Shown: positions 3 through 53,943 of the stretch, piece by piece
Layout: the number at the start of each line of letters is the position of its first letter
How positions within the stretch are numbered: the stretch's first letter is position 1
Virus record (IMG/VR): IMGVR_UViG_3300010938_000951
Coordinates: 186,001 to 250,000 of that record
Strand: one strand, 5' to 3'
Length of the DNA stretch: 64,000 nucleotides
The notes under the pieces: generated by a model
Told to the model about the DNA's origin: nothing
Seen by the model: only the letters and a program-made list of their open reading frames with translations
Databases searched by the model: none
Translations under genes and position numbers: made by a program

Positions 3-92
3 TTAATCTTTCAAAGAAGGGTTGATGGTCAGAAGATAGCCGCACCCAAAGGTACCATCATTGTACCTATTTCAGACTTGAGGTTTTCATAA
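3..92 (+). CDS. 3' end of an upstream gene (partial, ...LIFQRRVDGQKIAAPKGTIIVPISDLRFS*)
   Basis: Open frame from the window edge to TAA 90-92, which overlaps the ATG of the next gene (TAATG coupling). Confidence 0.45.
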   Translation, partial: LIFQRRVDGQKIAAPKGTIIVPISDLRFS

Positions 93-442
93 TGAATAAA
101 ACGTTTCTTAAGAAAATGAAAGCTCTATTATTAGAGCAAAAAGTAGAATTATTGAAATCTACTGCACAAGATGTGGTTGTTGATAATGAGGGTGATGAGA
201 CCGATGAAATTCAGGCTAATCAATTGATTGAAATGAATCATCAATTAGCTGTGCGCTCGTCTGCTAAAATGTCTCAAATAGAATCAGCTTTGAAAAGAAT
301 TGAAGAGGGAACATATGGCTTATGTCAAGACTGTGAAGATCCAATTCCAGAAAAGAGACTGCTAAGTAATCCATATTTTCAAACATGTGTGTCTTGTGCT
401 GAAGAGCGTGAAGCGGAAGAAAAACAAAGAAAGAGGTTTTGA
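92..442 (+). CDS. dksA: DksA/TraR-family C4 zinc-finger RNAP secondary-channel factor
   Basis: Coiled coil with DxxD tip (GDETDEI), then ALKRIEEGTYGLCQDC...RL..NP....CVSC. Confidence 0.9.
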   Translation: MNKTFLKKMKALLLEQKVELLKSTAQDVVVDNEGDETDEIQANQLIEMNHQLAVRSSAKMSQIESALKRIEEGTYGLCQDCEDPIPEKRLLSNPYFQTCVSCAEEREAEEKQRKRF

Positions 443-1029
443 TCTTGAATACATTAGTACTTGAGCAAACTGAATATGGCGAAGTGCCCATCGATGTGTA
501 TCAGAAATTATCTAGTGATCGTATTCTGTTTCTAACAGAATCTTTAAATGACGAACTTGCGTCTGATATTGTGGCAACTCTACTGCTAAAGGACAGTGAA
601 GACTCTGATGAAAAGATTACACTTTTCATTAATTGTCATGGTGGTGATATTCGCAATGCATTCATGATTTATGATGTTATGACTATGATTAAAGCGCCTA
701 TTGAAACTATCTGTGTTGGCACCGCTATGGATGAGGCCGTTATTTTGTTGTCTGGTGGTACCAAGGGTATGAGATTTGCAACCCCACATGCAATTATTGC
801 AGCAACACAGTTGGTAGCTGGTTGGCATATGCATACAGATTTGCCGGGTGCCCAAGCTGTTTTTGAGCAAGAAAAGCAAGATAATCAGCGCCTAATGGAG
901 ATTCTATCAAAAACAACTGGTAAATCTTTAACTCAGGTCAAAAAAGATTTTGATCGTCGAGTGTTCTTTAATGCCAAAAGTGCTTTGAAGTATGGTTTTA
1001 TTGATAAAATTGTTTCTTATAGTAAGTAA
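439..1029 (+). CDS. ClpP-fold protein, catalytically dead (ClpR-like)
   Basis: PIDVYQKL..DRILFL, FINCHGG and YGFIDKI are ClpP motifs. The triad positions read D, T and R instead of S, H and D. TTG start with GAGG upstream. Confidence 0.85.
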   Translation: MILNTLVLEQTEYGEVPIDVYQKLSSDRILFLTESLNDELASDIVATLLLKDSEDSDEKITLFINCHGGDIRNAFMIYDVMTMIKAPIETICVGTAMDEAVILLSGGTKGMRFATPHAIIAATQLVAGWHMHTDLPGAQAVFEQEKQDNQRLMEILSKTTGKSLTQVKKDFDRRVFFNAKSALKYGFIDKIVSYSK

Positions 1030-1032
1030 GGT

Positions 1033-1632
1033 ATGAATATGAATAAGAAAGAACAGCCACATCAGCCTGATAATTTTCGCATGCAAATGCCATCAGGATA
1101 TGGTGAAAGTTATGTCAAAATGACAAAAAGCCGATCCTTATTCATTTCGGAAAATGTTTCCGATAGATTAGGTGCCGAGCTATCAGCCATGTTATTATAT
1201 TATGATAATCAAGATCCCGAAGCGGATATTAATATTTACATTCATACCAACGGGGGCGCTACTACTGGTATGGCTAATATTTATGATGTAATGCAGATGA
1301 TACATGCCCCAATCAAAACTATTCTTTTAGGTAAAGCATATTCTGCGGGGGCTTGGATTTTAGCTGGTGGTACGAAGGGTAAGCGATATGCCCTTCATAG
1401 CGCTAAAGTTATGATTCATGGCACTCAATTCACTTTTCCTATTCCTGGATTCGATTTCACAAACAGCAAAAATTATTTGGAATTTGTGAACGAAGAAAAT
1501 GATGCAATGTTGAAAGTTTTAGCAAAGCATACAGGTCAACCTTTTGAAAAAATTAAAGCTGACTGCCAGACTGAATATTGGATGGATGCTAAAGCTGCGA
1601 AAGAATATGGCATTATAGATCATATTTTATAA
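1033..1632 (+). CDS. clpP: ClpP protease subunit
   Basis: IYIHTNGG, GKAYSAG (Ser), MIHG (His) and EYGIIDHI; the catalytic Asp position is Glu. Confidence 0.9.
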   Translation: MNMNKKEQPHQPDNFRMQMPSGYGESYVKMTKSRSLFISENVSDRLGAELSAMLLYYDNQDPEADINIYIHTNGGATTGMANIYDVMQMIHAPIKTILLGKAYSAGAWILAGGTKGKRYALHSAKVMIHGTQFTFPIPGFDFTNSKNYLEFVNEENDAMLKVLAKHTGQPFEKIKADCQTEYWMDAKAAKEYGIIDHIL

Positions 1633-1633
1633 G

Positions 1634-2077
1634 ATGAGTGAAATCATTTTTGATTTGGTATATTCTGATTATGACTGGCAGGAGCATCATTTTGTTAAAG
1701 CTCCTGATGGTACTACTCTAGAAGATTTTCAAAAACTTTGTGATAGCCTTATGCCAAAGGCTGGTTACAAGGCCATTCTAAAAAGATCATCCCCTAAAGT
1801 TGGTGGATGGGTTTGTTGGAGTGATGTTGTGGAGTCGTTGGTATCTTTGTTAGAAGAACAGGGATACCAACGAATTATTTTGGGCTCTTATGTTGTAAAC
1901 GGTGGTGTTATTATTCGGCCAGATGACTATGAGGGCAAAGAAAAATTAGGCTTTTCTTGCCAAGCCATTTCATCTTATAATGGTAAATTAGAAAGAAAAT
2001 TGGCCGAGGAACGAAAGGCCAAGAAACAATTAAGAATTGGTCTTTTAAAGAAAAAGGTAGTTCAAATCATTAAATAG
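1634..2077 (+). CDS. hypothetical protein
   Basis: 147-aa ORF tiling between neighbours; no family recognised. Confidence 0.6.
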   Translation: MSEIIFDLVYSDYDWQEHHFVKAPDGTTLEDFQKLCDSLMPKAGYKAILKRSSPKVGGWVCWSDVVESLVSLLEEQGYQRIILGSYVVNGGVIIRPDDYEGKEKLGFSCQAISSYNGKLERKLAEERKAKKQLRIGLLKKKVVQIIK

Positions 2078-2098: not shown

Positions 2099-3517
2099 AT
2101 GGAAAAGACCGCCCGAAAACCATCTGCTGACCCAATTCAGGAGAAATTAAGACAAAATAAAGCCAATTGGAACAAAGATGTGTCTGCATTTGTGAATAAT
2201 CTTATTCATCTAAAAAAGATGATGAATGGCTGGCCATCCAAGTTTTTCAAAGAGCGCTCTCGTATTACCGATCCTATTCCGGCGGATCCAGCAACTATTA
2301 TTGGTTCATTGGCGGGTGATTTTCAAGAGTTAGCCCAGAGAGGCAATGCTCTTGTACAAGAACAAATTGACTACTCAAAAAATCGTCGTAAAAGACAACC
2401 AAAGCAATTAAATCTACCACTTCAACAACCAGAGCAATCTCCTCAAGCTCCGGAGGCGCCAAAACCTCCAACACCAGATTTATCAAAGCAACTTTCATTG
2501 GGACTAAATGCTTCAAGTGAAAATACTAAGTTATTTAAGTTAGCGTCTGAGATGGAAGAAAAATATTTTCTCGAATCACAGGCATCAAACCCATTTACTC
2601 GTTTTATTGCTAGATTATTTAATCCAAAGTTTGGGTTTGGTGAGGCAGCTCGTATGCGTCGTTTGCGCATGACAATGTTAGATGGTTGTGCAAAGACTTT
2701 CAAAACTCTTAAAGAATTGCAAGCTACAGTAGTTAAATCTTCAGATGCCAGCATAGAACAGTCTCATAAAATGATGACCATGGCATGGAACAATTGGAAC
2801 ATTGTTTATAGGCTTGTGTCTGCTTTTAAAGGACTTAAACCAGGAGATATTAAAGAGTCCGGCGGAGCTATTGAAGATCCCGAATTAAAACGTCAAAGAG
2901 CCATTGAAGAGGGCCGAGATCCAGATGAATCCACAGAATCTCCGGCCATACCATCATCTCAAATAGTTTCAACGCTAGCTAGTAAGATAAAAGATTTCCG
3001 TGGAAATGCTACTTTTATTGGCGCAACTGTAAGTAATCCACAATTTAGAAACATGGTTTCTTTAATGGAACGACTTGCTGCTATGCCAAAAGGTAAAAAT
3101 TTATCAGTTGATGAAATTGCTGAAATAGAGAAAAATTATAATGAAGCCTTAGTGGCTACTGCTAAAGAATTAGGATTTTCCAATATGAGTTCTTTTAGCC
3201 ATATAGCTCAAACGATGGTTACTGTGGCAAATTCTCCAAAGAAAGAAGCGCAAGAATTACGTGGCTATCTTGGTAAGACAAGACATCAATTAATTCCAGG
3301 ATCAACCTCCGGCTCTAGGTTAGAGATTTATAACCTTATTGGTCAAACCAAAAAAGACATAGATGCTTTAATGGATTTGCTTGAAAAAGGTTTTGAGCGT
3401 GAAAAAATTGAAACGTTAGTGGGCCAAATTCATCGTCAGATGTCTGCTTTGCGTACTATGATTCGTTCTCTATTATATTCTACGAAACCAGAGAAAGCAT
3501 CTTCTCCATTTTTCTGA
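2099..3517 (+). CDS. hypothetical multi-domain helical protein with two clamp-binding-like motifs and K-x-A sites
   Basis: 472 aa; Pro-rich linker containing QLNLPL and QLSLGL; EKTAR, FKLAS and KKEAQ at segment borders. Confidence 0.8.
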   Translation: MEKTARKPSADPIQEKLRQNKANWNKDVSAFVNNLIHLKKMMNGWPSKFFKERSRITDPIPADPATIIGSLAGDFQELAQRGNALVQEQIDYSKNRRKRQPKQLNLPLQQPEQSPQAPEAPKPPTPDLSKQLSLGLNASSENTKLFKLASEMEEKYFLESQASNPFTRFIARLFNPKFGFGEAARMRRLRMTMLDGCAKTFKTLKELQATVVKSSDASIEQSHKMMTMAWNNWNIVYRLVSAFKGLKPGDIKESGGAIEDPELKRQRAIEEGRDPDESTESPAIPSSQIVSTLASKIKDFRGNATFIGATVSNPQFRNMVSLMERLAAMPKGKNLSVDEIAEIEKNYNEALVATAKELGFSNMSSFSHIAQTMVTVANSPKKEAQELRGYLGKTRHQLIPGSTSGSRLEIYNLIGQTKKDIDALMDLLEKGFEREKIETLVGQIHRQMSALRTMIRSLLYSTKPEKASSPFF

Positions 3518-3524
3518 GGCAAAC

Positions 3525-3929
3525 ATGGAACAAGGATATGTTTATTTACATGATAATGTCTTTCCTACATTGCTTGCCATTTCACAGGATGAGCAGTCAC
3601 GTGGTCTAATGCATCAGGAATGGCCTCCACCAGTAATGTCGTTTGTATATGGCATGCCACAGTCTAATAGATTTTGGATGAAGAATACACCAAGCCCCTT
3701 AGATATTGTGTTTTGTCATAAAGGTAAAGTGGCAGAAATTTGTTTTGGTGAACCTCACTCAACTGAAATTATTGGCACTCAGATTAGTGATCTTGTAATT
3801 GAGCTACCATATGGAACAGTAGATTCGATAGGTTTGAAGGTTGGGCAAGCGGCCGGACTTATAAAGCCTACACAAGAAGACCTGCGCAAAATTTTTGCTA
3901 CAAAATACGGACTATTTGTAAAATTCTGA
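3525..3929 (+). CDS. DUF192 (UPF0127) family protein
   Basis: EQSRGLM, FWMKNTPSPLDIVF and VIELPYG motifs. Confidence 0.85.
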   Translation: MEQGYVYLHDNVFPTLLAISQDEQSRGLMHQEWPPPVMSFVYGMPQSNRFWMKNTPSPLDIVFCHKGKVAEICFGEPHSTEIIGTQISDLVIELPYGTVDSIGLKVGQAAGLIKPTQEDLRKIFATKYGLFVKF

Positions 3930-3975: not shown

Positions 3976-4959
3976 ATGGATACCGTACAACATTTCAACC
4001 AGATTCTTAGCAGTTTTAATATCAAAGCTACCTGTCTAGATATGCATCAAGTCGATAACTATGTTTATTACGATCTGAAATTGCATCCACGAGCTAAGGT
4101 AAAAGATATTCAAAAGTATGCTGATGAGATTTCATTGACACTTAAGAAAAGTAAACCAAGTGTCAAAGTACTTCATGAACAAGGAGTAGTACGAGTTGAG
4201 TTTGCTTCTCCTCGTGAAACACCACTCAAATTGTTTGACCTGTTTACTAATGATGATGTGCCACAAGGCGGTCTAGTGTGTTTATTAGGACAAACGGTTG
4301 ATGGCAACAAGGTTTGGGTTGATTTACTAGATAATCCTCACTGTTTGGTTGCTGGAACAACTGGTTCTGGTAAAAGTACATTGCTTCATAATATTATTGC
4401 AAACGTATTTAATTATAATGATGCCGACTTATATTTAATTGATCCAAAACGTATTGAATTTTCTCAATATGAAGGTATGAGAAATACTCAAGTCTATAAT
4501 AATTACGATGATGTTGTAGAGTTTTTATCCAACATGATCGATATTATGGAAGACCGATTCATGAAATTGCGAGCTGGTTGGAGCATTCAAGATTTAAAAC
4601 CAGTTTTGATTATTATTGATGAGTTTTCCGATTTAGCAATGCAAGATAAAGGAGATGTGTTCTTTGAGCGACTATGTAGGTTGGCTCAGAAATGTCGTGC
4701 AGCTCGTATTTCTATTATGCTATCAACTCAACGACCATCTGTTAATATCATCAATGGTGCAATTAAGGCTAATTTTCCTGCTCGTATTGCATGTAAAGTT
4801 GCAAGCCATGTAGATTCTAAAGTAATTCTGGACGCGACCGGCGCTGAGAATTTGCTTGGTAAAGGTGATGCTCTATTACGCGATAATTATCGTAATATGG
4901 AACGGTTTCAGGTGGCATATACAGACGCAACAGAAGTTTGCGAAATTTTTAGGTCCTAA
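3976..4959 (+). CDS. FtsK/SpoIIIE-type ATPase (motor domain only)
   Basis: PHCLVAGTTGSGKS, IDPK, IIIDEF, STQRPS and AENLLGKGDAL; no TM or gamma domain. Confidence 0.9.
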   Translation: MDTVQHFNQILSSFNIKATCLDMHQVDNYVYYDLKLHPRAKVKDIQKYADEISLTLKKSKPSVKVLHEQGVVRVEFASPRETPLKLFDLFTNDDVPQGGLVCLLGQTVDGNKVWVDLLDNPHCLVAGTTGSGKSTLLHNIIANVFNYNDADLYLIDPKRIEFSQYEGMRNTQVYNNYDDVVEFLSNMIDIMEDRFMKLRAGWSIQDLKPVLIIIDEFSDLAMQDKGDVFFERLCRLAQKCRAARISIMLSTQRPSVNIINGAIKANFPARIACKVASHVDSKVILDATGAENLLGKGDALLRDNYRNMERFQVAYTDATEVCEIFRS

Positions 4960-7190: not shown

Positions 7191-8993
7191 ATGAAGACAT
7201 TAGTGATAGTAGAATCGCCAGCTAAGGCAGAAAAAATTCAAGGTTATTTAGGCAAAGACTATATTGTGTTGGCCAGTAAGGGTCACATTACTGATTTGGC
7301 TAAAGGCGGTCGATTTGGTTTGGGAGTTGATATTGATAAAGACTTTCGGCCACACTATGTTTTACAAGAAGATAAAATAGACACTTTAGACATGTTATTG
7401 AAAGCCACCAAGAAGTGCGATAACATTCTAATTGCAAGCGACCCCGATCGTGAGGGTGAAGCTATTGCTTGGCATCTTCAGGAGCGTTTAAAAGATACTG
7501 GATTACCAATTAAAAGAGTGGTTTTCAACGAAATCAAAAAAGATAAGGTTCAGAAGGCCATTAAATCTCCACGAGATGTAGATATTAATTTGTTTCATTC
7601 TCAAGAAGCCCGCCGCATACTAGATCGTTTAGTAGGATTTATGGCCTCACCATTTCTTATGAACTATTTTGGCCCGAAACTTTCTGCCGGTCGTGTTCAG
7701 TCTGTCGTTACTCGTATGGTTATTGACCGTGAGCGTGAGATTGAGGCTTTCGTTCCAGAAACTTTTTGGACTATCAGTGTTATGCTGGCTCCAGCTACAA
7801 ATATGAAGCACGGTTTCATGACTAAGTTTAATGGTCGCCCAACTGATGAAAAAATAGCCAAGTCAGTAAAAAGTACTTTGGATGTTGATCCGTATATTGT
7901 ATCAGAGGTTATTTCTGATGAGGAAGCAAAATATCCTCAACCACCTTTGGTAACTTCCACATTGCAACGAATTATGTCAAAACAGCATGGGTTTAGCGCT
8001 GATCGTACCATGAAAGCTGCGCAATCTCTATATGAAAATGGATATTGTACATATATTCGTACTGACTCTGTTCGAGTTGGCGATGAAGCCTTAGAAGATG
8101 TTCGTAAGTGGATCCAAGATCATAAGTACGGCCTACCTAAGAAGCCTTATTCTTATAAGAATAAGGATGCAGCACAAGATGCTCATGAATGTATTAGACC
8201 ATCGGATTTGACTTTAGAGCCTAATAATAACTATGCAATGGTTGATCCTGATGAAAAGTTGGTGTATGAGACTATTTGGAAGTATTTTGTTGCTAGTCAG
8301 ATGATGCCGGCCATCTATGATACAATGAAAGTTACTGCTCATATTAAAGGAGATCCAACTCATGAGGTGAAAGCATCTGGTAAAGCCCTTAAGAGTCAAG
8401 GATTTTTGGAAATCTTGGGCGTGCAAGATGATTCTAAAATTGATATCCCTGTACTTAAAGTCGGTGATATTCTAAATCGTTTTGGTAAAAATCCGGTTCA
8501 ACTAGAAAAGAAGCAGACACAGCCGCCACCAAGATATTCTGAAGATAAGCTTATTAAAGAATTAGTTACCAAGAATATCGGTCGTCCAGCCACTTATGCT
8601 GAATTGCTAAGTAAGATTAGTTCTCGCAATTATGTTGAGAAAAGGGGCAATGTCTTCCACGCTACAGATTTGGGCAAGAAAATTACCGATGAATTGATTC
8701 AGTTTTTTACTTTCATGGATTATGATTACACCGCAAAAATGGAACAACAACTTGACGAGATTGAAAGTGGAAAAGTTAATCATGTTGATATGTTGAAAAA
8801 GTTTTATCCTGAATTTAAAAAGGAGTTGGACAAGGCATATATTGGTCATGGCGCTAATATGTGCCCCAAATGTGGAAGTCCAATGTCTGTTCGTACAACC
8901 AAAACTGGTAAGTTTTGGGGATGCTCTGGATATCCTAAGTGTAAACACACTGTGAATATTACATCATCACAACCTGTAAATAATGTTGTTTAA
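7191..8993 (+). CDS. topA: DNA topoisomerase IA
   Basis: LVIVESPAKA, ASDPDREGEAIAWH, SAGRVQS, catalytic YIRTDS, GRPATY and a C-terminal CPKCG..C..YPKC ribbon. Confidence 0.97.
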   Translation: MKTLVIVESPAKAEKIQGYLGKDYIVLASKGHITDLAKGGRFGLGVDIDKDFRPHYVLQEDKIDTLDMLLKATKKCDNILIASDPDREGEAIAWHLQERLKDTGLPIKRVVFNEIKKDKVQKAIKSPRDVDINLFHSQEARRILDRLVGFMASPFLMNYFGPKLSAGRVQSVVTRMVIDREREIEAFVPETFWTISVMLAPATNMKHGFMTKFNGRPTDEKIAKSVKSTLDVDPYIVSEVISDEEAKYPQPPLVTSTLQRIMSKQHGFSADRTMKAAQSLYENGYCTYIRTDSVRVGDEALEDVRKWIQDHKYGLPKKPYSYKNKDAAQDAHECIRPSDLTLEPNNNYAMVDPDEKLVYETIWKYFVASQMMPAIYDTMKVTAHIKGDPTHEVKASGKALKSQGFLEILGVQDDSKIDIPVLKVGDILNRFGKNPVQLEKKQTQPPPRYSEDKLIKELVTKNIGRPATYAELLSKISSRNYVEKRGNVFHATDLGKKITDELIQFFTFMDYDYTAKMEQQLDEIESGKVNHVDMLKKFYPEFKKELDKAYIGHGANMCPKCGSPMSVRTTKTGKFWGCSGYPKCKHTVNITSSQPVNNVV

Positions 8994-9016: not shown

Positions 9017-10327
9017 ATGACAACTAAAGAAGAACACTTGACTCCGGAAGTTTCGGAGGAACAGGAACATCTTTCTCTAGAAAGATTAATTCGACTCAGC
9101 CCGACTCATAGGGTTGGGCCATCAGGTAATGATCAAAGGCCGCCAGCTAATTTTATTGATCTAATGAATTGGACAGTAAAAAATTTTGGTGGTGCCCTTA
9201 AAGATACGGCCAACTTAGAAAAGTTTGTGCATAATCGCATTATTATTGATGGGCAATTTCTTCAGTTTGCCAAAGAGCATAATGTAACTATAGAGTGTTT
9301 GTACAAAGACTCGTCTATCTCGTGGACTACTGAACATGATTTTGAAAAATTCTTTGTACAAGGAGTTTTTTATATCAAGGCCAAAGGTTTAGAGTTTTTG
9401 CACGCCGCTTTGTTTCACAAGGGGAATCAACAAGAAGATGAGGTAAGCTTTTTTATTGTTGTTTCTCAAAAGAACTATGAGTCGTATATCAAATTCCGAA
9501 ATCAATTTGATGATTGGGTTCAGGAACGAGATCGTAGTAATTTACATATTCGTGTAATAGAGGGCGAAGATATTCCTTATACCAAAGATCATTCTTGGGA
9601 GGAATTGTTTTTACCAGAACCAATTAAGAATGAAATTAGGGGGTTAGTTGAAAATTTCTTAGCCTCAAAAGATTTCTATCTAGAAAATAGAATTCCTTGG
9701 AAGCGAGGTATTCTGTTATATGGTAAACCTGGTAACGGAAAAACCTCTATTATTCGTACTATCATCTCTAATTATAATTTTAAACCTGTAACTATTGTTG
9801 CCGGCGCTAATGATGAGGCAGTACGAGAGGCATTTTCTTATGCGGAAGAGCAAAGTCCTTCGTTGCTTTATTTTGAAGACTTAGATTCACTACTTGAAAA
9901 AAGTGTTGATATTTCCTCCTTCCTTAATCTAATGGATGGTATTTCAGCCAAGAATGGCTTATTAGTCATTGCTACGGCTAATGAAGTTAAAAAATTGAAG
10001 ACCAATATCACTGATAGACCTTCAAGATTTGATAGAAAATTCGAAATACCACTTCCAAATGCAGAAATGGCTTATATATATCTTAAAAGATGGTTTGGCA
10101 ATCTCATTACAGCAAAGAAATGTAAGGAACTTGCCAAATATGCTGCTAAGTACGAGTTTTCTTATGCTTACTTAAAAGAATTGTATATCTCTTCTATGTT
10201 TGAAGCTCTTGCACATAATCGCAAAAGCCCAACTGAAAAAGATATTCAAAATGCTCTTAACCGACTAGTTAAAGATAAAAATCTATTGAATGGCGGTTCT
10301 GTTAATATCGATAAGTATTTTAAGTGA
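9017..10327 (+). CDS. AAA+ ATPase (FtsH/BCS1-like AAA domain, soluble)
   Basis: GILLYGKPGNGKT, YFEDLD, ATAN and the SRH RPSRFD. Confidence 0.9.
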   Translation: MTTKEEHLTPEVSEEQEHLSLERLIRLSPTHRVGPSGNDQRPPANFIDLMNWTVKNFGGALKDTANLEKFVHNRIIIDGQFLQFAKEHNVTIECLYKDSSISWTTEHDFEKFFVQGVFYIKAKGLEFLHAALFHKGNQQEDEVSFFIVVSQKNYESYIKFRNQFDDWVQERDRSNLHIRVIEGEDIPYTKDHSWEELFLPEPIKNEIRGLVENFLASKDFYLENRIPWKRGILLYGKPGNGKTSIIRTIISNYNFKPVTIVAGANDEAVREAFSYAEEQSPSLLYFEDLDSLLEKSVDISSFLNLMDGISAKNGLLVIATANEVKKLKTNITDRPSRFDRKFEIPLPNAEMAYIYLKRWFGNLITAKKCKELAKYAAKYEFSYAYLKELYISSMFEALAHNRKSPTEKDIQNALNRLVKDKNLLNGGSVNIDKYFK

Positions 10328-10351
10328 TAAGGTTAAAACGGGTTTTTGAAA

Positions 10352-10726
10352 ATGAAAGACCATAATAGAAAAAACAAGAGGAATACCAAAAAGGCATCGA
10401 GAGGAGGTGAATCGCAGCCAGTCGCCGTCAACGACAAATTCGCACACATTGAACCAGTGCAAGCCCAACCCCTCGAAGTCAAAGTGTATGGGAACAATTT
10501 CGACAAAGCCTTAAGGGCTTTTCGAGCCCTCGTTCAAAAAGAACGTGTTCTCTCGTCATATAAAGAAAAGCAATCGTACGAGAAGCCATCTGACAAACGT
10601 AGGAGAAAGCGCAACGAATCCAAAAGGAAACAACTTGAACTTTGTAGCAAGGGAGACTGTAGACATACAGATCATGCTAAAAACCGTAAGGAAAGAAAGT
10701 TCAAGAGAGGCTCTTCTCCAGAATAA
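10352..10726 (+). CDS. rpsU: ribosomal protein bS21 with N- and C-terminal extensions
   Basis: VKVYGNNFDKALRAFRALVQKERVL..YKEKQSYEKPSDKRRRKR core; ATG 10352 or TTG 10346. Confidence 0.85.
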   Translation: MKDHNRKNKRNTKKASRGGESQPVAVNDKFAHIEPVQAQPLEVKVYGNNFDKALRAFRALVQKERVLSSYKEKQSYEKPSDKRRRKRNESKRKQLELCSKGDCRHTDHAKNRKERKFKRGSSPE

Positions 10727-14315: not shown

Positions 14316-14843
14316 ATGATAATCACAAATAATGAAGCAGCGCTCCGTGTGTTTTGCGAGCCTGTCACTATGGATGAAGTTGGCTCACTTATAGATACAC
14401 TAGAAAAAGAGCTAGAGTACGCTAATCGTTTGGGAAAAAACGGAATTGGATTAGCGGCACCACAAATAGGTATCGCAAAAGATATTGCTATTGTTAGGTT
14501 GCCAAAAATGAACTTTAATTTAGTTAATGCTAAATTAGTTCAAGGATATGATCCTGCTGTGTTTACAGACGAAGGTTGTTTGTCTTTCCCTGGTCGTCTA
14601 GAAAATACCACTAGATTTCAAGAGGTTCATATAACTAATAATTTGGTTGAACCGTATAGTTTTATTGCGACAGGTTTTGTGGCAGTTGTATGTCAACACG
14701 AATTGGATCATTTAAACTCTACACTATTTATGGATCGTAGTATCCCAAAACAGACACCAGTAGTTAGAAAAGCAAAAATCGGACCAAATGAGCCATGTGT
14801 TTGCGGATCTGGCAAAAAATATAAAAAGTGTTGTGGTCGATGA
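14316..14843 (+). CDS. def: peptide deformylase with C-terminal SEC-C motif
   Basis: [17 protein letters not shown] and QHELDH; ends [21 protein letters not shown]. Confidence 0.95.
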
Positions 14844-49587: not shown

Positions 49588-50091
49588 CCCAGCCTGTTTT
49601 TGAGTATTTCTAGTGGGCCTAATTACTATTTCAGGCTTATCATGTGGACAATATCCAAAAAATCCTTTAGCACAGTTGCAATTATAGCATAATAATTGAT
49701 ATTCTTCTTTAGGAAAGTTATTTTTAATTAGCCAACGGTATAATTTACCACCAGATTTCTTACCATTTTGTCGTCGATCTTCTGCACCATCATTATTTAT
49801 GTGATCAATAGTTAGAAATTCTAAGGTAGTTTCCCCACAACAAGTGCATTTGCCACCATAGGCTTCTATAATTTTTTGTTTAACACTAAGATCATAAACT
49901 CTTTGTTGTTCTCTTATTATTTCTTTTCTATTTGTATATCTTCTTTTGCTATATTCTTTACAACAAAAGATACACATATATTTAGCCTGTTTAATATCGG
50001 AAGGTCTAGTATTATCTTTAGTTAGGCTTTTGAAGCATACAGTGCAGCTTTTGCCTTCAAAACTATATTGTCGTTTTTTCTTATCTGTCAT
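49585..50091 (-). CDS. His-Me finger (HNH-like) endonuclease with N-terminal zinc finger, inverted
   Basis: CTVC and CIFC; YGGKCTCCGE..LTIDHINNDG..YQLLCYNCNCAK. Confidence 0.88.
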   Translation of the reverse strand: MTDKKKRQYSFEGKSCTVCFKSLTKDNTRPSDIKQAKYMCIFCCKEYSKRRYTNRKEIIREQQRVYDLSVKQKIIEAYGGKCTCCGETTLEFLTIDHINNDGAEDRRQNGKKSGGKLYRWLIKNNFPKEEYQLLCYNCNCAKGFFGYCPHDKPEIVIRPTRNTQKQAG

Positions 50092-50117
50092 GGGTATATT
50101 TCAGAATATATCCATGA
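50088..50117. promoter_or_regulatory. palindrome TCATGGGTATATT-tcag-AATATATCCATGA containing both divergent start codons; candidate bidirectional promoter
   Basis: 13-bp arms with one mismatch; G(A/G)TATAT lies 14 nt before each ATG. Confidence 0.7.
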
Positions 50118-51991
50118 ACAATGATACTTATAAAGAAATGTTTTATAGGTTTAAGGATAAGCTAGCTAATCTTGATCCGGTAGAATTTTGCCAGAAACAT
50201 TTAACACTTGAAGGAGAGCCATTTTCTCTCGTAGGCAACGGGTATAAACCTTTCAGCGATATCTATAGATACATTGGAATTAAGGCATTAGAAAAAGATT
50301 CTAAACCAGTTATTCTAGTAAAGGGACGTCAGGTAGGTGCTACTACCATGGCAAGCGCCCTTGAAATGTATTTCATGGGCTCTGGTTTATTTGGAGATGG
50401 ATTCCGTCCACCAATTCGTGTTATTCATGCTTTTCCTCAATTAGAATTAGCGGCAGCTTATTCAAAAACTAAACTCAATCAAATGATTTCTCAGGCTAAA
50501 ATCCCTGAGGGAGCCGTAGAAAATAAAGCATCTCGTCCAAAGTCTTTCATGCAGCAATTGCTTGATACTACGACTGCTACTAATGACTCTTTACATTTTA
50601 AACAATTCTTGGGCGGAAATCACTTGTGGATTGAATCTACTGGTGTAGATGCCGACAGAATCATGGGTCGTACCGCTGATATCATATTTTTTGACGAGGT
50701 ACAGAAAACTACCAGTGTAGCTATTGGAAACGCGCTTAAAATTTTAACCAACGCCAAATATGGTAAGCCAACTAAAGGCGTACAAGTATTTTTTGGAACG
50801 CCACGTCGTAAGGGATCTGATTATCATAAGATGTGGCAATCATCATCTCAGCAGTATTATTATCTTGGATGCGAAAAATGCGAAAAGCATTTTCCTCTTT
50901 ATACTCCAGGTTCTGATGATTGGGAAAAAGTTTGGATTCACGGTATGATTGTTAAATGTACCCATTGTGGTCATGAACAAGATAAACTACAAGCACAAGA
51001 ACGTGGTAAGTGGGTTCCGCTAAAAGATCCAAACGATCCAGATTGCGCAATGGTTGGGTTTCATATTAACCAACTTTACATGCCAAAATTTACACGAGAA
51101 GATATTGAAAAAGAAAAGCCTGGTAAACATCCGATCAACACAGAGCGCGTTTTTCAAAATGAGGTTCTTGGAGAGTTTTATCAAGGTGATGCTACCCCAA
51201 TGTCTCCAGAAGACATTCGTGTAAATTGTGCCGATTTCGAAAGAAAATTTAGCCCTCGTATTTTGCCAGCTAAAGGTGTAACGCAACAATTAACTGTACT
51301 TGGAATCGACTACGGTGCACGTTCAGATTTGGAACAACTAGCAGACCCAGAAAGAGTAAGACCAGCAGGACAATCTTATAGTACAGCAGTTGTATTACAA
51401 ACAAAAGGCCCAAGTATACTATCAATTGAGTTTGCTACCAAATTTAAACGAAATGACATAGAAAGCAAAAAAGGTATAATTGATCAGTTGATGAGACAGT
51501 ACAGTATACAATTGGCTATTGGAGACATTGGTTATTCTAATGACTTCTCATCTCTATTGCATAATACATACGGAGATAGATACTTAGTGTCTCGTGCTCA
51601 TAATAAAGTTAATGAGCATGTTAAGTTCAATCATGAAGCTTTTCCAAAAGAAATTGTTTTTGAAAGAGATTTTTATATTAGTGAACTTTACGATCAAATG
51701 AAAAAAGGATTAGTTAGGTTTCCATATGGCGATTATGAGAAAATCGCATGGCTTATTGATCATTGTTGTAGTATGGAATTAAAACCATCTATTTCTAAAT
51801 ATGGAGATCATACAGTACATTATGTTAAAGGCGGCACTCCAAACGATGGATTTATGGCATTATTAAATGCTTATTTGGCCTATAAATTCCTGGTAAGTCG
51901 AGGGTTTACAAATAATAATCCAACATTACACAATACTAAAAACTTGACGAAACCTATGGTAATTACTGGCTATGTACCTAGGAAGTTCTAA
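50114..51991 (+). CDS. terL: terminase large subunit
   Basis: VKGRQVGATT, FFDEVQ, FGTP, CEKC/CTHC, GIDYG, DIGY and NDG..ALLNAY. The start is ATG 50114, not 49946. Confidence 0.92.
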   Translation: MNNDTYKEMFYRFKDKLANLDPVEFCQKHLTLEGEPFSLVGNGYKPFSDIYRYIGIKALEKDSKPVILVKGRQVGATTMASALEMYFMGSGLFGDGFRPPIRVIHAFPQLELAAAYSKTKLNQMISQAKIPEGAVENKASRPKSFMQQLLDTTTATNDSLHFKQFLGGNHLWIESTGVDADRIMGRTADIIFFDEVQKTTSVAIGNALKILTNAKYGKPTKGVQVFFGTPRRKGSDYHKMWQSSSQQYYYLGCEKCEKHFPLYTPGSDDWEKVWIHGMIVKCTHCGHEQDKLQAQERGKWVPLKDPNDPDCAMVGFHINQLYMPKFTREDIEKEKPGKHPINTERVFQNEVLGEFYQGDATPMSPEDIRVNCADFERKFSPRILPAKGVTQQLTVLGIDYGARSDLEQLADPERVRPAGQSYSTAVVLQTKGPSILSIEFATKFKRNDIESKKGIIDQLMRQYSIQLAIGDIGYSNDFSSLLHNTYGDRYLVSRAHNKVNEHVKFNHEAFPKEIVFERDFYISELYDQMKKGLVRFPYGDYEKIAWLIDHCCSMELKPSISKYGDHTVHYVKGGTPNDGFMALLNAYLAYKFLVSRGFTNNNPTLHNTKNLTKPMVITGYVPRKF

Positions 51992-52015
51992 AGCGCCTAA
52001 ATACTGAGCTTTACT

Positions 52016-52022
52016 GATATAT
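52016..52022 (+). promoter_or_regulatory. motif A TGATATAT
   Basis: Intergenic between TerL and portal. Confidence 0.4.
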
Positions 52023-52068
52023 CATATTTTGTGTATTCTAGTAGAGGGTATAGTGGAACAGAGGTTAC

Positions 52069-53943
52069 ATGGCTGGTATTAAAAAATCGGGATTAGGAGA
52101 TCATCCGTCCTTTTCAGCAAAGTTCTTACAGGGCAGATCCACCACCCCTCAAGTAAGTGCTATTATGGCTCAGGGTGTTTCTGGAGAAAGAAGAGTTATT
52201 CTTTCAGACGAAGTAGACCAAGGATATTTTAGAGACGGTTCTGGGCCAAGTTTAAATAAAATGGCACTAAATTCTCCCACAAGTGCTTCAAATGTAGTCT
52301 CTTCAGTGGGTTTCAAGAAAAATGCTCAAGTAGTTTCTTCAGTTGGAGGAATGTTTCGTGGTATTCATGGAGATTCCGTTAAGCAAACTCCTGAAGTATA
52401 TTCCCCTCTTTGGCTTAATAGTAATCTAAACCTTCCCAGGGACCGTGCAACAATCAATGCATGGTGTCGTAGCTTTTTTGCTTTAAATCCATTTGTACAC
52501 AATGCTATTAGTTTACATAGCACTTATCCTATTAGCAAGCTTTCTATTAAATGTCCAAACAAAGATATTGAAAAATTCTTTGATGATATGATTGAAGAAA
52601 TTGATTTAATGAATATTTGCGTACAAATTGCCCAAGAATATTGGCTTTTAGGAGAAGCATTTGTTTATGCAGAATTAGATGAAGGTAAAGGCAAGTGGAG
52701 TCGCCTACACATTCAGAATCCAGATTTTATGCTTGTCAAACGTACGGTTGTAGCAAGCGAACCAATCATCATGCTTCGTCCTGATGAAAACCTCAAAAAA
52801 ATTATTTTCTCAAATCGTCCAACTGATATTGAACAACGTAAACAATTAAATCAACACATCATTGATTCTGTTAGACGTGGTGAAAATATTCCACTAGACA
52901 ATTTCCACGTATCACATTTGGCTCGTCGTATTAGTCCATACGAAATCAGAGGCACAGGATTACCTGTTTGTATTTTCCGTCAGTTAATGTTATTCGACAA
53001 ATTGCGTGAATCTAAATATGCACAGTCTGATAATATGATCAATCCATTGACTTTGGTTAAGATTGGTTCGGCTGATTATAAGCCAACTTTTGCTGACCTA
53101 GAAGCTTGGAGAAGTGTATTTGAAGAAGCGCAGTACGATAAAGACTTTAAGATATTTACCCATGAAGGAGTAGCGGTTGAAAGAGTAGGTTGGGGACAGG
53201 GAATCTATGATATCTCTGGAGATATTACTCAGCTACTTAAAGAAATTTTTATTGGGTTATTCGTACCACCTGTTATGATGGATGGTGGCGATACTACCAC
53301 TTATGCTAATGCTGGTGTAGCTTTGGACGTTCTTCGTCAGAGGTACATGCAGTTCCGTAACATGATGTCCATTTGGTTAAAGAATAAGATTTTTGCTCCA
53401 ATCTCCAAAATTCAAGGGTTTTATGACTACTCTGGTGGAGAGAAACAACTTATTGTTCCTGAAATTGATTGGAATCACATGTCATTATTTGATGCTGGAG
53501 ATTATATCAATAGTTTAATGACATTATCTCAAGGACAAGCGGATCAAAAGAGAGTATCTATTCATACTCTTTATCGTTCATTGGGTCTTGAGTACGAAGA
53601 TGAAGTACGTAAAATGCGTAAAGAAAATATTCAAAATGCAATTGCTAAGAAAGAAATTGCCGCGTTAGATCAAATGGATCTAAATGCTCTTCGTGCTTTG
53701 GATGATGAGGATGAAATTCCAGAACCAAAACAACCGGGTGCTGGACAAGAACAACCAGTACCAGGAGAGATGCCAGGAGGAGCACCGGGTGGATTACCAG
53801 ATTTGGGTCTACCAGGCGGTGGCCCTCCACCACCTCCACCACCAGGTGGCGGTGGACCTCCACCACCACCTCCTCCGCCACCAGAAGGCGGTCCACCAGG
53901 CGGTGGACCTCCAGCAGGCGGAGCACCTCCACCAGCTCCATAA
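52069..53943 (+). CDS. portal protein with Pro/Gly-rich C-terminal tail
   Basis: Follows TerL; WCRSFF..NP.V.NAI, HLARR.SPYE.RG..LP and PLTLVKIG portal-type motifs; GAGG SD. Confidence 0.85.
   Translation: MAGIKKSGLGDHPSFSAKFLQGRSTTPQVSAIMAQGVSGERRVILSDEVDQGYFRDGSGPSLNKMALNSPTSASNVVSSVGFKKNAQVVSSVGGMFRGIHGDSVKQTPEVYSPLWLNSNLNLPRDRATINAWCRSFFALNPFVHNAISLHSTYPISKLSIKCPNKDIEKFFDDMIEEIDLMNICVQIAQEYWLLGEAFVYAELDEGKGKWSRLHIQNPDFMLVKRTVVASEPIIMLRPDENLKKIIFSNRPTDIEQRKQLNQHIIDSVRRGENIPLDNFHVSHLARRISPYEIRGTGLPVCIFRQLMLFDKLRESKYAQSDNMINPLTLVKIGSADYKPTFADLEAWRSVFEEAQYDKDFKIFTHEGVAVERVGWGQGIYDISGDITQLLKEIFIGLFVPPVMMDGGDTTTYANAGVALDVLRQRYMQFRNMMSIWLKNKIFAPISKIQGFYDYSGGEKQLIVPEIDWNHMSLFDAGDYINSLMTLSQGQADQKRVSIHTLYRSLGLEYEDEVRKMRKENIQNAIAKKEIAALDQMDLNALRALDDEDEIPEPKQPGAGQEQPVPGEMPGGAPGGLPDLGLPGGGPPPPPPPGGGGPPPPPPPPPEGGPPGGGPPAGGAPPPAP

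What the first reader, a model, noticed from the sequence alone, without database searches (positions are those of the whole stretch)
439..1632. Phage-encoded ClpR/ClpP pair: one dead and one active subunit in tandem
Seen, against E. coli ClpP: the first gene has GTAMDEA (Ser to Asp), AATQL (His to Thr) and DFDRR (Asp to Arg), so all three triad residues are lost. The second keeps GKAYSAG and MIHG, with Glu at the Asp position. Established: heteromeric ClpP/ClpR cores occur in cyanobacteria and plastids. Inference: a phage heteromeric protease core, or decoy rings that capture host ClpX/ClpA. No Clp ATPase is in the window.
Basis: partly seen in the sequence, partly recalled or inferred. Interest (0 to 1): 0.6.

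Follow-up and report, generated by a model that had tools for sequence, protein, structure and literature searches.

The report
Huge-phage dead-plus-active ClpP gene pair
A clade of very large bacteriophages (about 430-500 kb) always carries two adjacent ClpP protease genes, one with its catalytic residues destroyed and one intact, which resembles the ClpP/ClpR protease cores of cyanobacteria and chloroplasts but probably arose separately inside phages.

Summary
Window 445-1029 (+) and 1039-1632 (+) are two full-length ClpP-family genes (PF00574, E 1.9e-47 and 8.4e-46). They lie 3-9 nt apart in a huge-phage genome whose identical proteins sit on a 490,794-bp contig.

Aligned to E. coli ClpP, gene 1 has Asp/Thr/Arg at the Ser/His/Asp triad positions. 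Gene 2 has Ser/His/Glu.

The dead state is conserved, not a one-off:
- 120 of 120 closest homologues of gene 1 lack the triad.
- All 43 IMG/VR contigs with a gene-2 relative at 40% identity or more carry a triad-less paralogue directly upstream.
- Every gene-2 orthologue keeps Ser-His-Asp or Ser-His-Glu.

Both genes are under equally strong purifying selection (dN/dS about 0.04-0.08) and co-diverge. The best tree makes them sister clades, which fits one duplication in a phage ancestor.

Only the dead copy keeps the canonical mature ClpP N-terminal hairpin. No ClpX/ClpA-type ATPase with a docking loop was found in this record or in 8 near-complete relatives.

My best reading is a heteromeric, ClpP/ClpR-like core, probably driven by host unfoldases. 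Co-assembly has only weak computational support (ipSAE 0.51, best control 0.00). I found no description of such a phage pair in the searched literature. I rate it a new variant of a known kind, of moderate interest.

The parts
92..442 (+). DksA/TraR-type C4 zinc-finger protein (116 aa). Its stop (TGA 440-442) abuts the start of the dead ClpP gene. It is the first gene of the conserved block.
   Evidence: PF01258, E 4.2e-11; phrog_54. A homologue lies directly upstream of the pair in all 36 pair-bearing loci of the first IMG/VR scan (L016-L050, L053), in L014 and in L063, and also upstream of the single ClpP in L051 and L052.
445..1029 (+). Gene 1: catalytically dead ClpP paralogue (ClpR-like), 194 aa from TTG 445 (196 aa if from TTG 439). 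Triad positions are Asp98, Thr123 and Arg174 in 196-aa numbering (codons 730-732, 805-807, 958-960). An invariant Glu99 follows the former nucleophile. The N-terminus begins at the mature ClpP N-terminus with a canonical hairpin and no propeptide.
   Evidence: PF00574, E 1.9e-47. Alignment to E. coli ClpP. Triad columns in 120 homologues: D 119/120; T73/S40/N6/A1; R 119/120. Dead in all 43 IMG/VR pairs. dN/dS 0.04-0.08. AF2 model plus Foldseek: ClpP fold, TM 0.76-0.80.
1039..1632 (+). Gene 2: catalytically competent ClpP, 197 aa from ATG 1039 (199 aa if from ATG 1033). It has Ser104, His129 and Glu181 in 199-aa numbering (codons 1342-1344, 1417-1419, 1573-1575). Its N-terminal region is divergent, variable and shortened, without the canonical hairpin. 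It has a 5-residue insert just after the catalytic His.
   Evidence: PF00574, E 8.4e-46. Alignment. S 120/120, H 120/120, E 111 and D 8 of 120. SHD or SHE in all 43 IMG/VR pairs. AF2 pLDDT 83.7, with no structure predicted for residues 1-33. Foldseek finds ClpP over 168 core columns.
1634..2077 (+). orf147, a small protein of unknown function. It starts 2 nt after gene 2 and is present only in the window's closer relatives.
   Evidence: No Pfam or PHROG hit. Homologue found in L014, L016, L017, L021, L022, L024 and L044, with a marginal match in L026. Atlas search gave no lead.
2099..3517 (+). orf472, a conserved neighbour of unknown function with a Pro/Gln-rich low-complexity stretch. It follows the pair across the whole clade.
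   Evidence: tblastn homologue downstream of the pair in all pair-bearing loci examined. No Pfam, PHROG or Atlas lead.
3525..3929 (+). DUF192 protein, the end of the conserved block.
   Evidence: PF02643, E 1.3e-15. Conserved downstream in nearly all loci, including the single-ClpP loci L051 and L052.

Best explanation
The two genes are a conserved module of a clade of about 430-500 kb tailed phages. Gene 1 is a ClpP paralogue that lost all three catalytic residues. Gene 2 is a paralogue that kept a working triad, Ser-His-Asp ancestrally and Ser-His-Glu in the window's subclade.

Shown here:
- Both have the ClpP fold.
- The dead/active split is universal in the clade.
- The genes are always adjacent in the order dead then active, a few bases apart or overlapping, inside a conserved block (dksA-like, dead, active, orf472, DUF192).
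- They co-diverge and are equally constrained.
- The best tree makes them sister clades, consistent with one duplication in a phage ancestor.

Inferred:
- They are co-translated and assemble into one heteromeric ClpP barrel. The dead subunit is a structural or allosteric and docking subunit, and the active subunit supplies the proteolytic sites, as in ClpP3/ClpR or two-ring ClpP1P2 cores.
- Only the dead subunit keeps the mature-type N-terminal gating hairpin and tightly conserved pocket residues. It is therefore the likelier face for an AAA+ unfoldase.
- Nearly all complete relatives encode no Clp unfoldase, so the unfoldase is most likely the host's ClpX, ClpA or ClpC.
- The purpose would be to give the phage its own degradation chamber for remodelling the infected cell's proteome.

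Asp98/Glu99 and Arg173/Arg174 now occupy the former active site. They may form a salt-bridge cluster that fixes the subunit in an assembly-competent conformation. This point is speculative.

The confidence of 0.6 is for co-assembly into one heteromeric core. That the genes are a conserved dead-plus-active ClpP pair is close to certain (about 0.95).
For: Family and fold.

Conserved loss and conserved retention. These cover 120 of 120 close homologues and a triad-less paralogue upstream in 43 of 43 contigs. Every gene-2 orthologue is SHD or SHE.

Strict co-occurrence from both sides: the gene-1-seeded scan gave 36 of 36 and the gene-2-seeded scan gave 43 of 43, which is 43 distinct contigs. L014 and a 383-kb contig, L063, add two more.

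Exactly two ClpP genes occur in each of five 97-100% complete relatives.

Selection: dN/dS is 0.04-0.08 for both genes. Mean pairwise divergence is equal, 0.456 against 0.466, and Mantel r is 0.85 with 0 of 2000 permutations reaching it.

Origin:
- The dead clade has 99-100 support and the active clade 92-93.
- The two are sister at SH-aLRT 90 in the first tree.
- The constrained dead-plus-active clade is 0.36 lnL better than the free tree, with p-AU 0.51.
- A single active ClpP sits in the same dksA...DUF192 context in L051 and L052.

Operon: there is a 3-9 nt gap, a Shine-Dalgarno motif inside the end of gene 1, and no promoter- or terminator-like site between the genes.

N-terminus and pocket.

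No Clp ATPase or ClpS.

Complex prediction: weak support. ipSAE is 0.51 against a best control of 0.00. Runs agree in at least 92% of contacts, and the partner's pLDDT is at least 83. The mark was reached by 51 of 78 solved complexes and by 2 of 108 mismatched pairs. A score of 0.60 or under was seen in only 5 of those solved complexes and in all 4 mismatches that passed.

Not a head protease: the NCBIfam head-maturation models score far below cut-off. Terminase and portal lie 48 kb away.
Against: No experiment or read data were available.

The complex score is weak. It may also reflect the model's memory of solved ClpP oligomers, so it cannot separate hetero- from homo-oligomers.

Co-divergence and co-occurrence are expected for any two linked essential genes and do not prove binding.

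Pocket residues are hydrophobic and conserved in both paralogues, so sequence does not settle which face docks an ATPase.

The host is unknown, so no host unfoldase could be examined.

The sister relationship of the two clades depends on sparse outgroups. It is not recovered in the free search once long-branch viral ClpP-like sequences are added.
Confidence: 0.6

Rival explanations
1. Decoy or dominant-negative. The dead subunit acts on its own. It forms inert rings, or mixes into host ClpP rings, and so sequesters host ClpX/ClpA/ClpC or poisons host ClpP. This would protect phage proteins from host proteolysis or block ClpP-dependent defence. The active paralogue would have a separate job.
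For: The dead copy keeps the canonical ATPase-contacting N-terminal hairpin and conserved pocket positions. It is under strong purifying selection despite being inactive. No phage Clp unfoldase is present.
Against: A decoy would not need an obligatory active partner. Yet the active paralogue is present immediately downstream in 43 of 43 contigs and co-diverges with the dead copy. No genome with the dead copy alone was found.
Confidence: 0.15
2. Gate-less, unfoldase-independent protease. The active paralogue lacks the N-terminal gating hairpin. A ring or barrel containing it would therefore have a permanently open pore and degrade unfolded or nascent host proteins without any AAA+ partner, much as ADEP-activated or N-terminally truncated ClpP does. 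The dead subunit would only stabilise the barrel.
For: The gene-2 family's N-terminus is shortened, variable and predicted to be unstructured. Seven of 8 near-complete relatives have no Clp-type ATPase, and the one that has an AAA_2 protein lacks an evident IGF/IGL docking tripeptide. It is established for bacterial ClpP (my own knowledge, not tested here) that N-terminal truncation or ADEP binding opens the pore.
Against: The dead partner conserves a full gating hairpin and pocket, which would be pointless without an unfoldase. The extra N-terminal residues of gene 2 could simply be a propeptide that is cleaved off. No structural model of the pore could be made with the tools available.
Confidence: 0.15
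3. Virion morphogenesis. The pair is a ClpP-like prohead protease or scaffold system that processes capsid proteins.
For: PHROG families hit by both proteins are annotated as head maturation protease. [quoted passage not shown]
Against: The PHROG hits are weak (E 1e-7 to 1e-23) next to Pfam ClpP (1e-46). The NCBIfam ClpP-related head-maturation model scores 42.6 and 49.7 bits against a cut-off of 120. Both are full-length canonical ClpPs at about 35% identity to E. coli ClpP. The genes sit between a DksA-like regulator and FtsK, topoisomerase and replication genes, 48 kb from terminase and portal.
Confidence: 0.05
4. The dead copy is a decaying duplicate (pseudogene in progress) with no function.
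For: All three catalytic residues are lost, and the stem branch to the dead clade is long (branch length 1.03).
Against: The reading frame is intact in every relative. dN/dS is 0.04-0.08, and divergence equals that of the active copy. Motifs are invariant, including Glu after the former nucleophile and the N-terminal hairpin.
Confidence: 0.01

Closest known systems
Cyanobacterial ClpP3/ClpR and plastid ClpP/ClpR cores (non-catalytic ClpR subunits assembled with catalytic ClpP in one tetradecamer)
   Same: A ClpP-fold paralogue has lost the Ser-His-Asp triad, is kept under selection and is encoded with a catalytic paralogue. The presumed role is structural or docking within a mixed core. The plastid system is described in PMC6508832. 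The cyanobacterial details are from my own knowledge.
   Different: The pair is encoded by a phage, not a cell or organelle. The trees suggest the dead copy arose by duplication of the phage's own ClpP, so the likeness is convergent rather than by descent. No cyanobacterial ClpR sequence was in the tree. Ring arrangement and stoichiometry are unknown. The active partner uses Glu instead of Asp in this subclade.
Two-ring heteromeric ClpP1P2 cores (Mycobacterium, Listeria, Streptomyces, Chlamydia, Pseudomonas)
   Same: Tandem paralogues share the labour, with one ring docking the unfoldase and the rings activating each other. Solved ClpP1P2 chains are among the best structural matches, for example 4u0g, 6iw7, 9ndj and 8yd0. 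Papers listed include PMC6889138, PMC9765437 and PMC12451819.
   Different: In those systems both paralogues keep at least Ser and His. Listeria ClpP1 has Asn for Asp (my own knowledge). Here one paralogue is completely dead. The candidate docking face, which keeps the N-terminal hairpin, belongs to the dead subunit.
ClpP genes of jumbo and huge phages in general (for example phage G ClpP plus ClpX)
   Same: ClpP is a frequent auxiliary gene of large phages. Supporting papers are PMC7824862, PMC11748809, bioRxiv 10.64898/2026.10.24.761521 and phage G in PMC12484599. [quoted passage not shown]
   Different: None of these papers, and none of the six literature searches run, describes one copy as catalytically dead or the two as an obligate pair. 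Phage G carries its own ClpX, whereas this clade does not.

Membership tests
ClpP family (Pfam PF00574, MEROPS S14 fold) | Full-length match to the CLP_protease profile above the gathering score | tested here: met
   Gene 1 scores 161.9 bits and gene 2 scores 156.6 bits, against a cut-off of 20.2.
ClpP family (Pfam PF00574, MEROPS S14 fold) | ClpP three-dimensional fold | tested here: met
   AF2 models have pLDDT 71.3 and 83.7. The best Foldseek PDB matches are all ClpP, with TM 0.76-0.80.
Catalytic ClpP (ATP-dependent Clp endopeptidase proteolytic subunit, NCBIfam TIGR00493 / NF001368) | Ser-His-Asp catalytic triad | tested here: not met
   Gene 1 has Asp/Thr/Arg. Gene 2 has Ser/His/Glu, so Ser and His are met and Asp is replaced conservatively.
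Catalytic ClpP (ATP-dependent Clp endopeptidase proteolytic subunit, NCBIfam TIGR00493 / NF001368) | Score above the curated equivalog or subfamily cut-off | tested here: not met
   Against NF001368 the scores are 171.5 and 154.2 bits (cut-off 249). Against TIGR00493 they are 145.9 and 135.3 bits (cut-off 308.6).
ClpR-type non-catalytic ClpP paralogue | Loss of the catalytic triad, with the fold retained and under purifying selection | tested here: met
ClpR-type non-catalytic ClpP paralogue | Co-assembly with a catalytic ClpP paralogue in one core | tested here: inconclusive
   The genes are always adjacent and co-diverge. The complex prediction gives weak support only, 0.51 against a best control of 0.00. 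No experiment was possible.
ClpR-type non-catalytic ClpP paralogue | Common descent with cyanobacterial or plastid ClpR | tested here: inconclusive
   The dead clade groups with its own active partner: sister at SH-aLRT 90, and the constrained clade is not rejected, p-AU 0.51. Gene 1 scores best against the generic ClpP model NF001368. No cyanobacterial ClpR sequence could be added to the tree.
Two-ring ClpP1P2 heterotetradecamer | Two tandem ClpP paralogues | tested here: met
Two-ring ClpP1P2 heterotetradecamer | Homoheptameric rings of each paralogue stacked face to face, with the unfoldase docking on one ring only | not testable with these tools
   The size limit of the complex tool excludes 14-mers and no coordinates are returned. 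The only indirect hint is that the N-terminal hairpin is kept in gene 1 alone.
ClpP-related phage head-maturation protease (NCBIfam NF045542 / NF045540) | Score above the cut-off and a position in the head-assembly module | tested here: not met
   The scores are 42.6 and 49.7 bits against a cut-off of 120. Terminase and portal lie at 49946-53943, 48 kb away.

The most novel reading that the evidence does not exclude
The pair is a phage-built protease made for host takeover. A permanently dead ring keeps the canonical docking hairpin and captures the host's AAA+ unfoldases. A gate-less active ring, which lacks the N-terminal hairpin, forms an open and deregulated chamber. Infected cells would then suffer ADEP-like uncontrolled proteolysis, or re-routed ClpX/ClpA/ClpC-driven proteolysis, that the host ClpP regulation cannot restrain. 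On this reading, the dead-subunit architecture of the kind seen in ClpR would have evolved convergently in viruses as a weapon rather than for housekeeping.
Probability: 0.15. Interest if true: 0.8.

Novelty: new variant of a known kind. Interest (0 to 1): 0.55.

Why it matters
Catalytically dead ClpP paralogues (ClpR) are so far a hallmark of cyanobacteria, plastids and apicoplasts, and why they exist is still debated. This looks like an independent origin of the same architecture in viruses. It is widespread: 43 IMG/VR contigs and several hundred protein clusters in metagenomes. It is also strictly conserved.

That gives a second natural experiment on what a dead subunit contributes to a Clp core. 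The candidates are assembly, allosteric activation, unfoldase docking and reduced site number.

ClpP is reported as one of the most common auxiliary genes of huge phages (PMC11748809; bioRxiv 10.64898/2026.10.24.761521). Knowing that in this clade it is an obligate dead-plus-active pair without its own unfoldase turns a vague 'proteostasis' annotation into a testable host-takeover hypothesis. The proteins are small and soluble, so biochemical tests are straightforward even though the phages are uncultured.

Tried and rejected
- **Nucleotide search against GenBank phages:** no match. tblastn found only ClpPs at 42% identity or less, so there is no cultured close relative.
- **Phage-borne unfoldase.**
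  - AAA_2 gave only sub-threshold hits in the own record; the ORFs underneath have MoxR- or BCS1-like AAA features by inspection of their translations, without a family scan.
  - The window's AAA protein (9017-10327) is classic-clade, PAN/Cdc48/FtsH/BCS1-like, with no ClpP-docking tripeptide evident.
  - One relative (G004) has a 739-aa ClpA/ClpB-like protein, but I found no IGF/IGL tripeptide at the expected D2 loop. I therefore do not count it as a ClpP partner.
  - No ClpS was found.
- **Conserved neighbours orf147 and orf472:** there are no Pfam, PHROG or ESM-Atlas leads.
- **Host.**
  - One pair-bearing 383-kb contig is binned in a Chitinophagales MAG, and a weak hit lies in a Saprospirales MAG.
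  - Against that, Shine-Dalgarno-like motifs precede about 50% of genes, against 12% at random positions. By my own knowledge this is atypical for Bacteroidota, so I leave the host unresolved.
- **Complex prediction of gene 1 with gene 2:** weak support only. ipSAE is 0.51 against a best control of 0.00. Both proteins are ClpP-family, so the pass may come from memory of solved ClpP oligomers.
- **Pseudogene reading:** rejected on dN/dS and conservation.
- **Alternative genetic code:** not needed. Both frames are open under table 11, and the 'stop inside' flagged is gene 2's own terminal TAA.
Full report
**What is there**

The window is positions 186001-250000 of a 266,899-bp IMG/VR virus record that CheckV rates 62% complete. 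Proteins identical to both genes lie on a 490,794-bp contig. Near-complete relatives measure 433-481 kb, and one has direct terminal repeats.

The window encodes phage hallmark genes:
- terminase large subunit at 49946-51991 and portal at 52069-53943;
- a phage-type DNA polymerase, SbcCD and a UvsX-like recombinase.

It also carries typical huge-phage extras: ribosomal protein S21, peptide deformylase and topoisomerase. Almost all genes are on the + strand. No tRNA gene lies in the window. It is a huge tailed phage.

**The two genes**

ORFs 439-1029 and 1033-1632 both match Pfam CLP_protease end to end, at E 1.9e-47 and 8.4e-46. They match about 110 distinct solved ClpP sequences at E down to 1e-37.

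The likelier starts are TTG 445 and ATG 1039. Each lies 7-8 nt downstream of a Shine-Dalgarno-like motif (AAGAGG and AAGG), and database gene calls for the homologues are 194 and 197 aa.

The upstream DksA-like gene ends at 442. Gene 1 ends at 1029 and gene 2 at 1632, and the next ORF starts at 1634. No promoter-like or terminator-like site lies between the ClpP genes. They therefore look co-transcribed and possibly translationally coupled.

**Checking the triads**

I aligned both proteins with E. coli K-12 ClpP, taken from NC_000913.3.

| Triad position | Gene 1 | Gene 2 |
|---|---|---|
| Ser | Asp98 | Ser104 |
| His | Thr123 | His129 |
| Asp | Arg174 | Glu181 |

The codon coordinates were verified.

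**Is the loss conserved?**

Yes, without exception.
- In the 120 best database homologues of gene 1 (63-100% identity), the Ser column is D in 119 and N in 1. The His column is T 73, S 40, N 6 and A 1. The Asp column is R in 119 and Q in 1.
- In the 120 best homologues of gene 2, the columns are S 120, H 120, and E 111 or D 8.
- An IMG/VR scan seeded with the gene-1 family found 38 loci. The 36 at 43% identity or more all have a gene-2 orthologue immediately downstream.
- A scan seeded with the gene-2 family found 43 loci at 40% identity or more, and all 43 have a triad-less paralogue immediately upstream. Together these are 43 distinct contigs.
- A 492-kb JGI contig and a 383-kb contig binned in a Chitinophagales MAG add two more.

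In deeper branches the dead copy shows many different residue combinations: D/N/K/A/F/H/Y/G/S at the first site, T/S/N/G/E/D at the second, and R/K/T/Q/I/L/V/G at the third. It never has a complete triad. The partner is always SHD or SHE. Glu for Asp is a derived state confined to the window's subclade of 10.

A Glu directly after the former nucleophile is invariant in the dead family. Five relatives that are 97-100% complete hold exactly two ClpP genes each.

**Selection and history**

dN/dS against five or six relatives is 0.04-0.08 for both genes. Synonymous sites are near saturation, so these values are rough.

Across 37 distinct pairs the two families have the same mean divergence, 0.456 against 0.466. 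Their distance matrices correlate at Mantel r 0.85, with 0 of 2000 permutations as high.

In a 79-row tree:
- the dead clade has support 100 and the active clade 92;
- the two are sisters at SH-aLRT 90;
- their internal topologies are largely congruent.

When 21 divergent single viral ClpP-like sequences were added, the free search placed 18 long-branch sequences beside the active clade. The tree with dead plus active held as one clade is nevertheless 0.36 log-likelihood units better, with p-AU 0.51.

Two more distant contigs (L051, L052) carry a single Ser-His-Asp ClpP in the same dksA-like ... DUF192 context. This looks like the pre-duplication state.

The simplest history is one tandem duplication in an ancestor of this phage clade. 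The upstream copy then lost catalysis once, along a long stem branch (1.03 against 0.38), and has been under tight constraint since. Outgroup sampling is thin, so this history is likely rather than proven.

**Features that bear on mechanism**

*The dead subunit.* It begins almost exactly at the mature N-terminus of E. coli ClpP, with no propeptide. That fits a protein that cannot process itself. It keeps the canonical N-terminal hairpin sequence, which is nearly invariant across the family. AF2 predicts the hairpin, though with low confidence.

*The active subunit.* Its N-terminal segment is variable and charged. It lacks about 12 residues of the hairpin, and no structure is predicted for it. 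It also carries a 5-residue insert just after the catalytic His. The dead subunit carries a 3-residue insert in the handle helix.

*Docking pocket.* I checked the positions that line the IGF-loop/ADEP pocket in E. coli ClpP, using a residue list from my own knowledge. They are hydrophobic and conserved in both families, so they do not discriminate between them.

*Oligomerisation sensor.* The Asp-Arg 'oligomerisation sensor' next to the catalytic Asp is kept in the dead copy (DFDRR). In the window's active copy it is replaced by QTE.

**Unfoldases**

No AAA_2 (ClpX/ClpA/ClpB-type) protein is present in the own record. None was found in 7 of the 8 relatives that are at least 90% complete.

The eighth relative has a 739-aa ClpA/ClpB-like protein. 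I could not find an IGF/IGL tripeptide at the expected loop in it. No ClpS was found.

The window's AAA protein at 9017-10327 belongs to the classic clade. BCS1-like AAA proteins are known in jumbo phages (PMC7824862).

**Interpretation**

The data fit a heteromeric ClpP core best. The dead subunit would be an obligatory structural, allosteric or docking partner, and the active subunit would provide the proteolytic sites. Host Clp unfoldases are the likely motors.

I put about 0.6 on co-assembly into one core. I put about 0.35 on the specific idea that the dead subunit forms the unfoldase-docking face.

The complex predictor gave weak support. The score was 0.51 and the best of 3 controls was 0.00. 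The three runs agreed in at least 92% of contacts, and the partner's pLDDT was at least 83. By the tool's calibration, 51 of 78 solved complexes and 2 of 108 mismatched pairs reach the mark. Scores of 0.60 or below were seen in only 5 of those solved complexes and in all 4 mismatches that passed. Both chains belong to a family with many solved oligomers, so the pass may be from memory. I treat it as a minor point.

The rivals are:
- a pure decoy role for the dead subunit, disfavoured because the active partner is obligatory;
- an unfoldase-independent, gate-less protease, which is compatible with the missing hairpin and missing unfoldases but sits awkwardly with the conserved hairpin on the dead subunit;
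- a head-maturation role, disfavoured by scores and position;
- a decaying pseudogene, rejected.

**Comparison with what is known**

Functionally the closest systems are the ClpP/ClpR cores of cyanobacteria and plastids (PMC6508832) and the two-ring ClpP1P2 cores of actinobacteria, Listeria, Chlamydia and Pseudomonas (structural matches).

Membership by descent in ClpR is not supported, because the dead copy groups with its own phage partner. Both proteins are ClpP-family members by profile and fold. Both fall below NCBI's curated ClpP cut-offs.

ClpP genes in large phages are well known. One survey even counted two Clp protease pVOGs near bS21 genes (PMC9723584). None of the six literature searches run found any description of a dead-plus-active pair. 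The held library is incomplete, so this absence is indicative only.

**Limits**

- No read or expression data are available.
- The host is unresolved.
- No 14-mer modelling was possible and no coordinates were returned, so the proposed Asp98/Glu99-Arg173/Arg174 salt-bridge cluster and the ring arrangement are inference.

Noticed in passing
window 92-442 (+): A DksA/TraR-type zinc-finger protein with an acidic coiled-coil-tip-like motif (D-x-x-D). It is always encoded directly upstream of the ClpP pair, abutting its start, in every pair-bearing locus checked. It also precedes the single ClpP in L051 and L052. It may link RNA-polymerase control and proteolysis in one early operon.
   Followed up: partly
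window 9017-10327 (+); also G000:C1 12720-14348 and 88248-89435: Three classic-clade AAA+ ATPases, each with a large N-terminal domain. In the window's copy the AAA module is nearest to proteasome-activating nucleotidase, Cdc48, FtsH and BCS1. None has Clp-type AAA_2 features. Their substrates are unknown.
   Followed up: partly
window 10346-10726 (+) and 14316-14843 (+): A phage-encoded ribosomal protein S21 with an N-terminal extension of about 43 residues, and a peptide deformylase with a C-terminal SEC-C zinc motif. Both are translation-related auxiliary genes within 13 kb of the ClpP pair.
   Followed up: no
window 3976-4959 (+) and 7191-8993 (+): A short FtsK/SpoIIIE-like ATPase (327 aa, motor domain only) and a bacterial-type topoisomerase I/III with a Zn ribbon, just downstream of the ClpP block.
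   Followed up: no
window 59151-62846 (+); GC rises to 0.42-0.45 at 60-64 kb: A 1231-aa protein whose residues 105-213 weakly match a head-maturation-protease PHROG. It may be the real prohead protease or a fusion protein. The region has a higher GC content than the rest of the window (0.34-0.41).
   Followed up: no
L054:1210-3429 (-), in the 472,749-bp relative G004: One relative of the clade encodes a 739-aa two-ring ClpA/ClpB-like AAA+ protein that has neither the ClpB middle domain nor an evident IGF/IGL ClpP-docking tripeptide. It is unclear whether it serves the ClpP pair.
   Followed up: partly
L122 (IMGVR_UViG_3300033066_001736), upstream ClpP copy: One divergent 'dead' copy keeps Ser at the nucleophile position but has Glu at the His position and Gly at the Asp position (S-E-G). 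It is the only case seen with any triad residue retained.
   Followed up: no
whole record G000 (266,899 bp): Shine-Dalgarno-like motifs precede about 50% of + strand ORFs, against 12% at random positions. The only binning hints, however, point to Bacteroidota (Chitinophagales and Saprospirales MAGs), a phylum that by my own knowledge rarely uses Shine-Dalgarno motifs. IMG/VR labels the record 'provirus', yet a relative has direct terminal repeats.
   Followed up: partly
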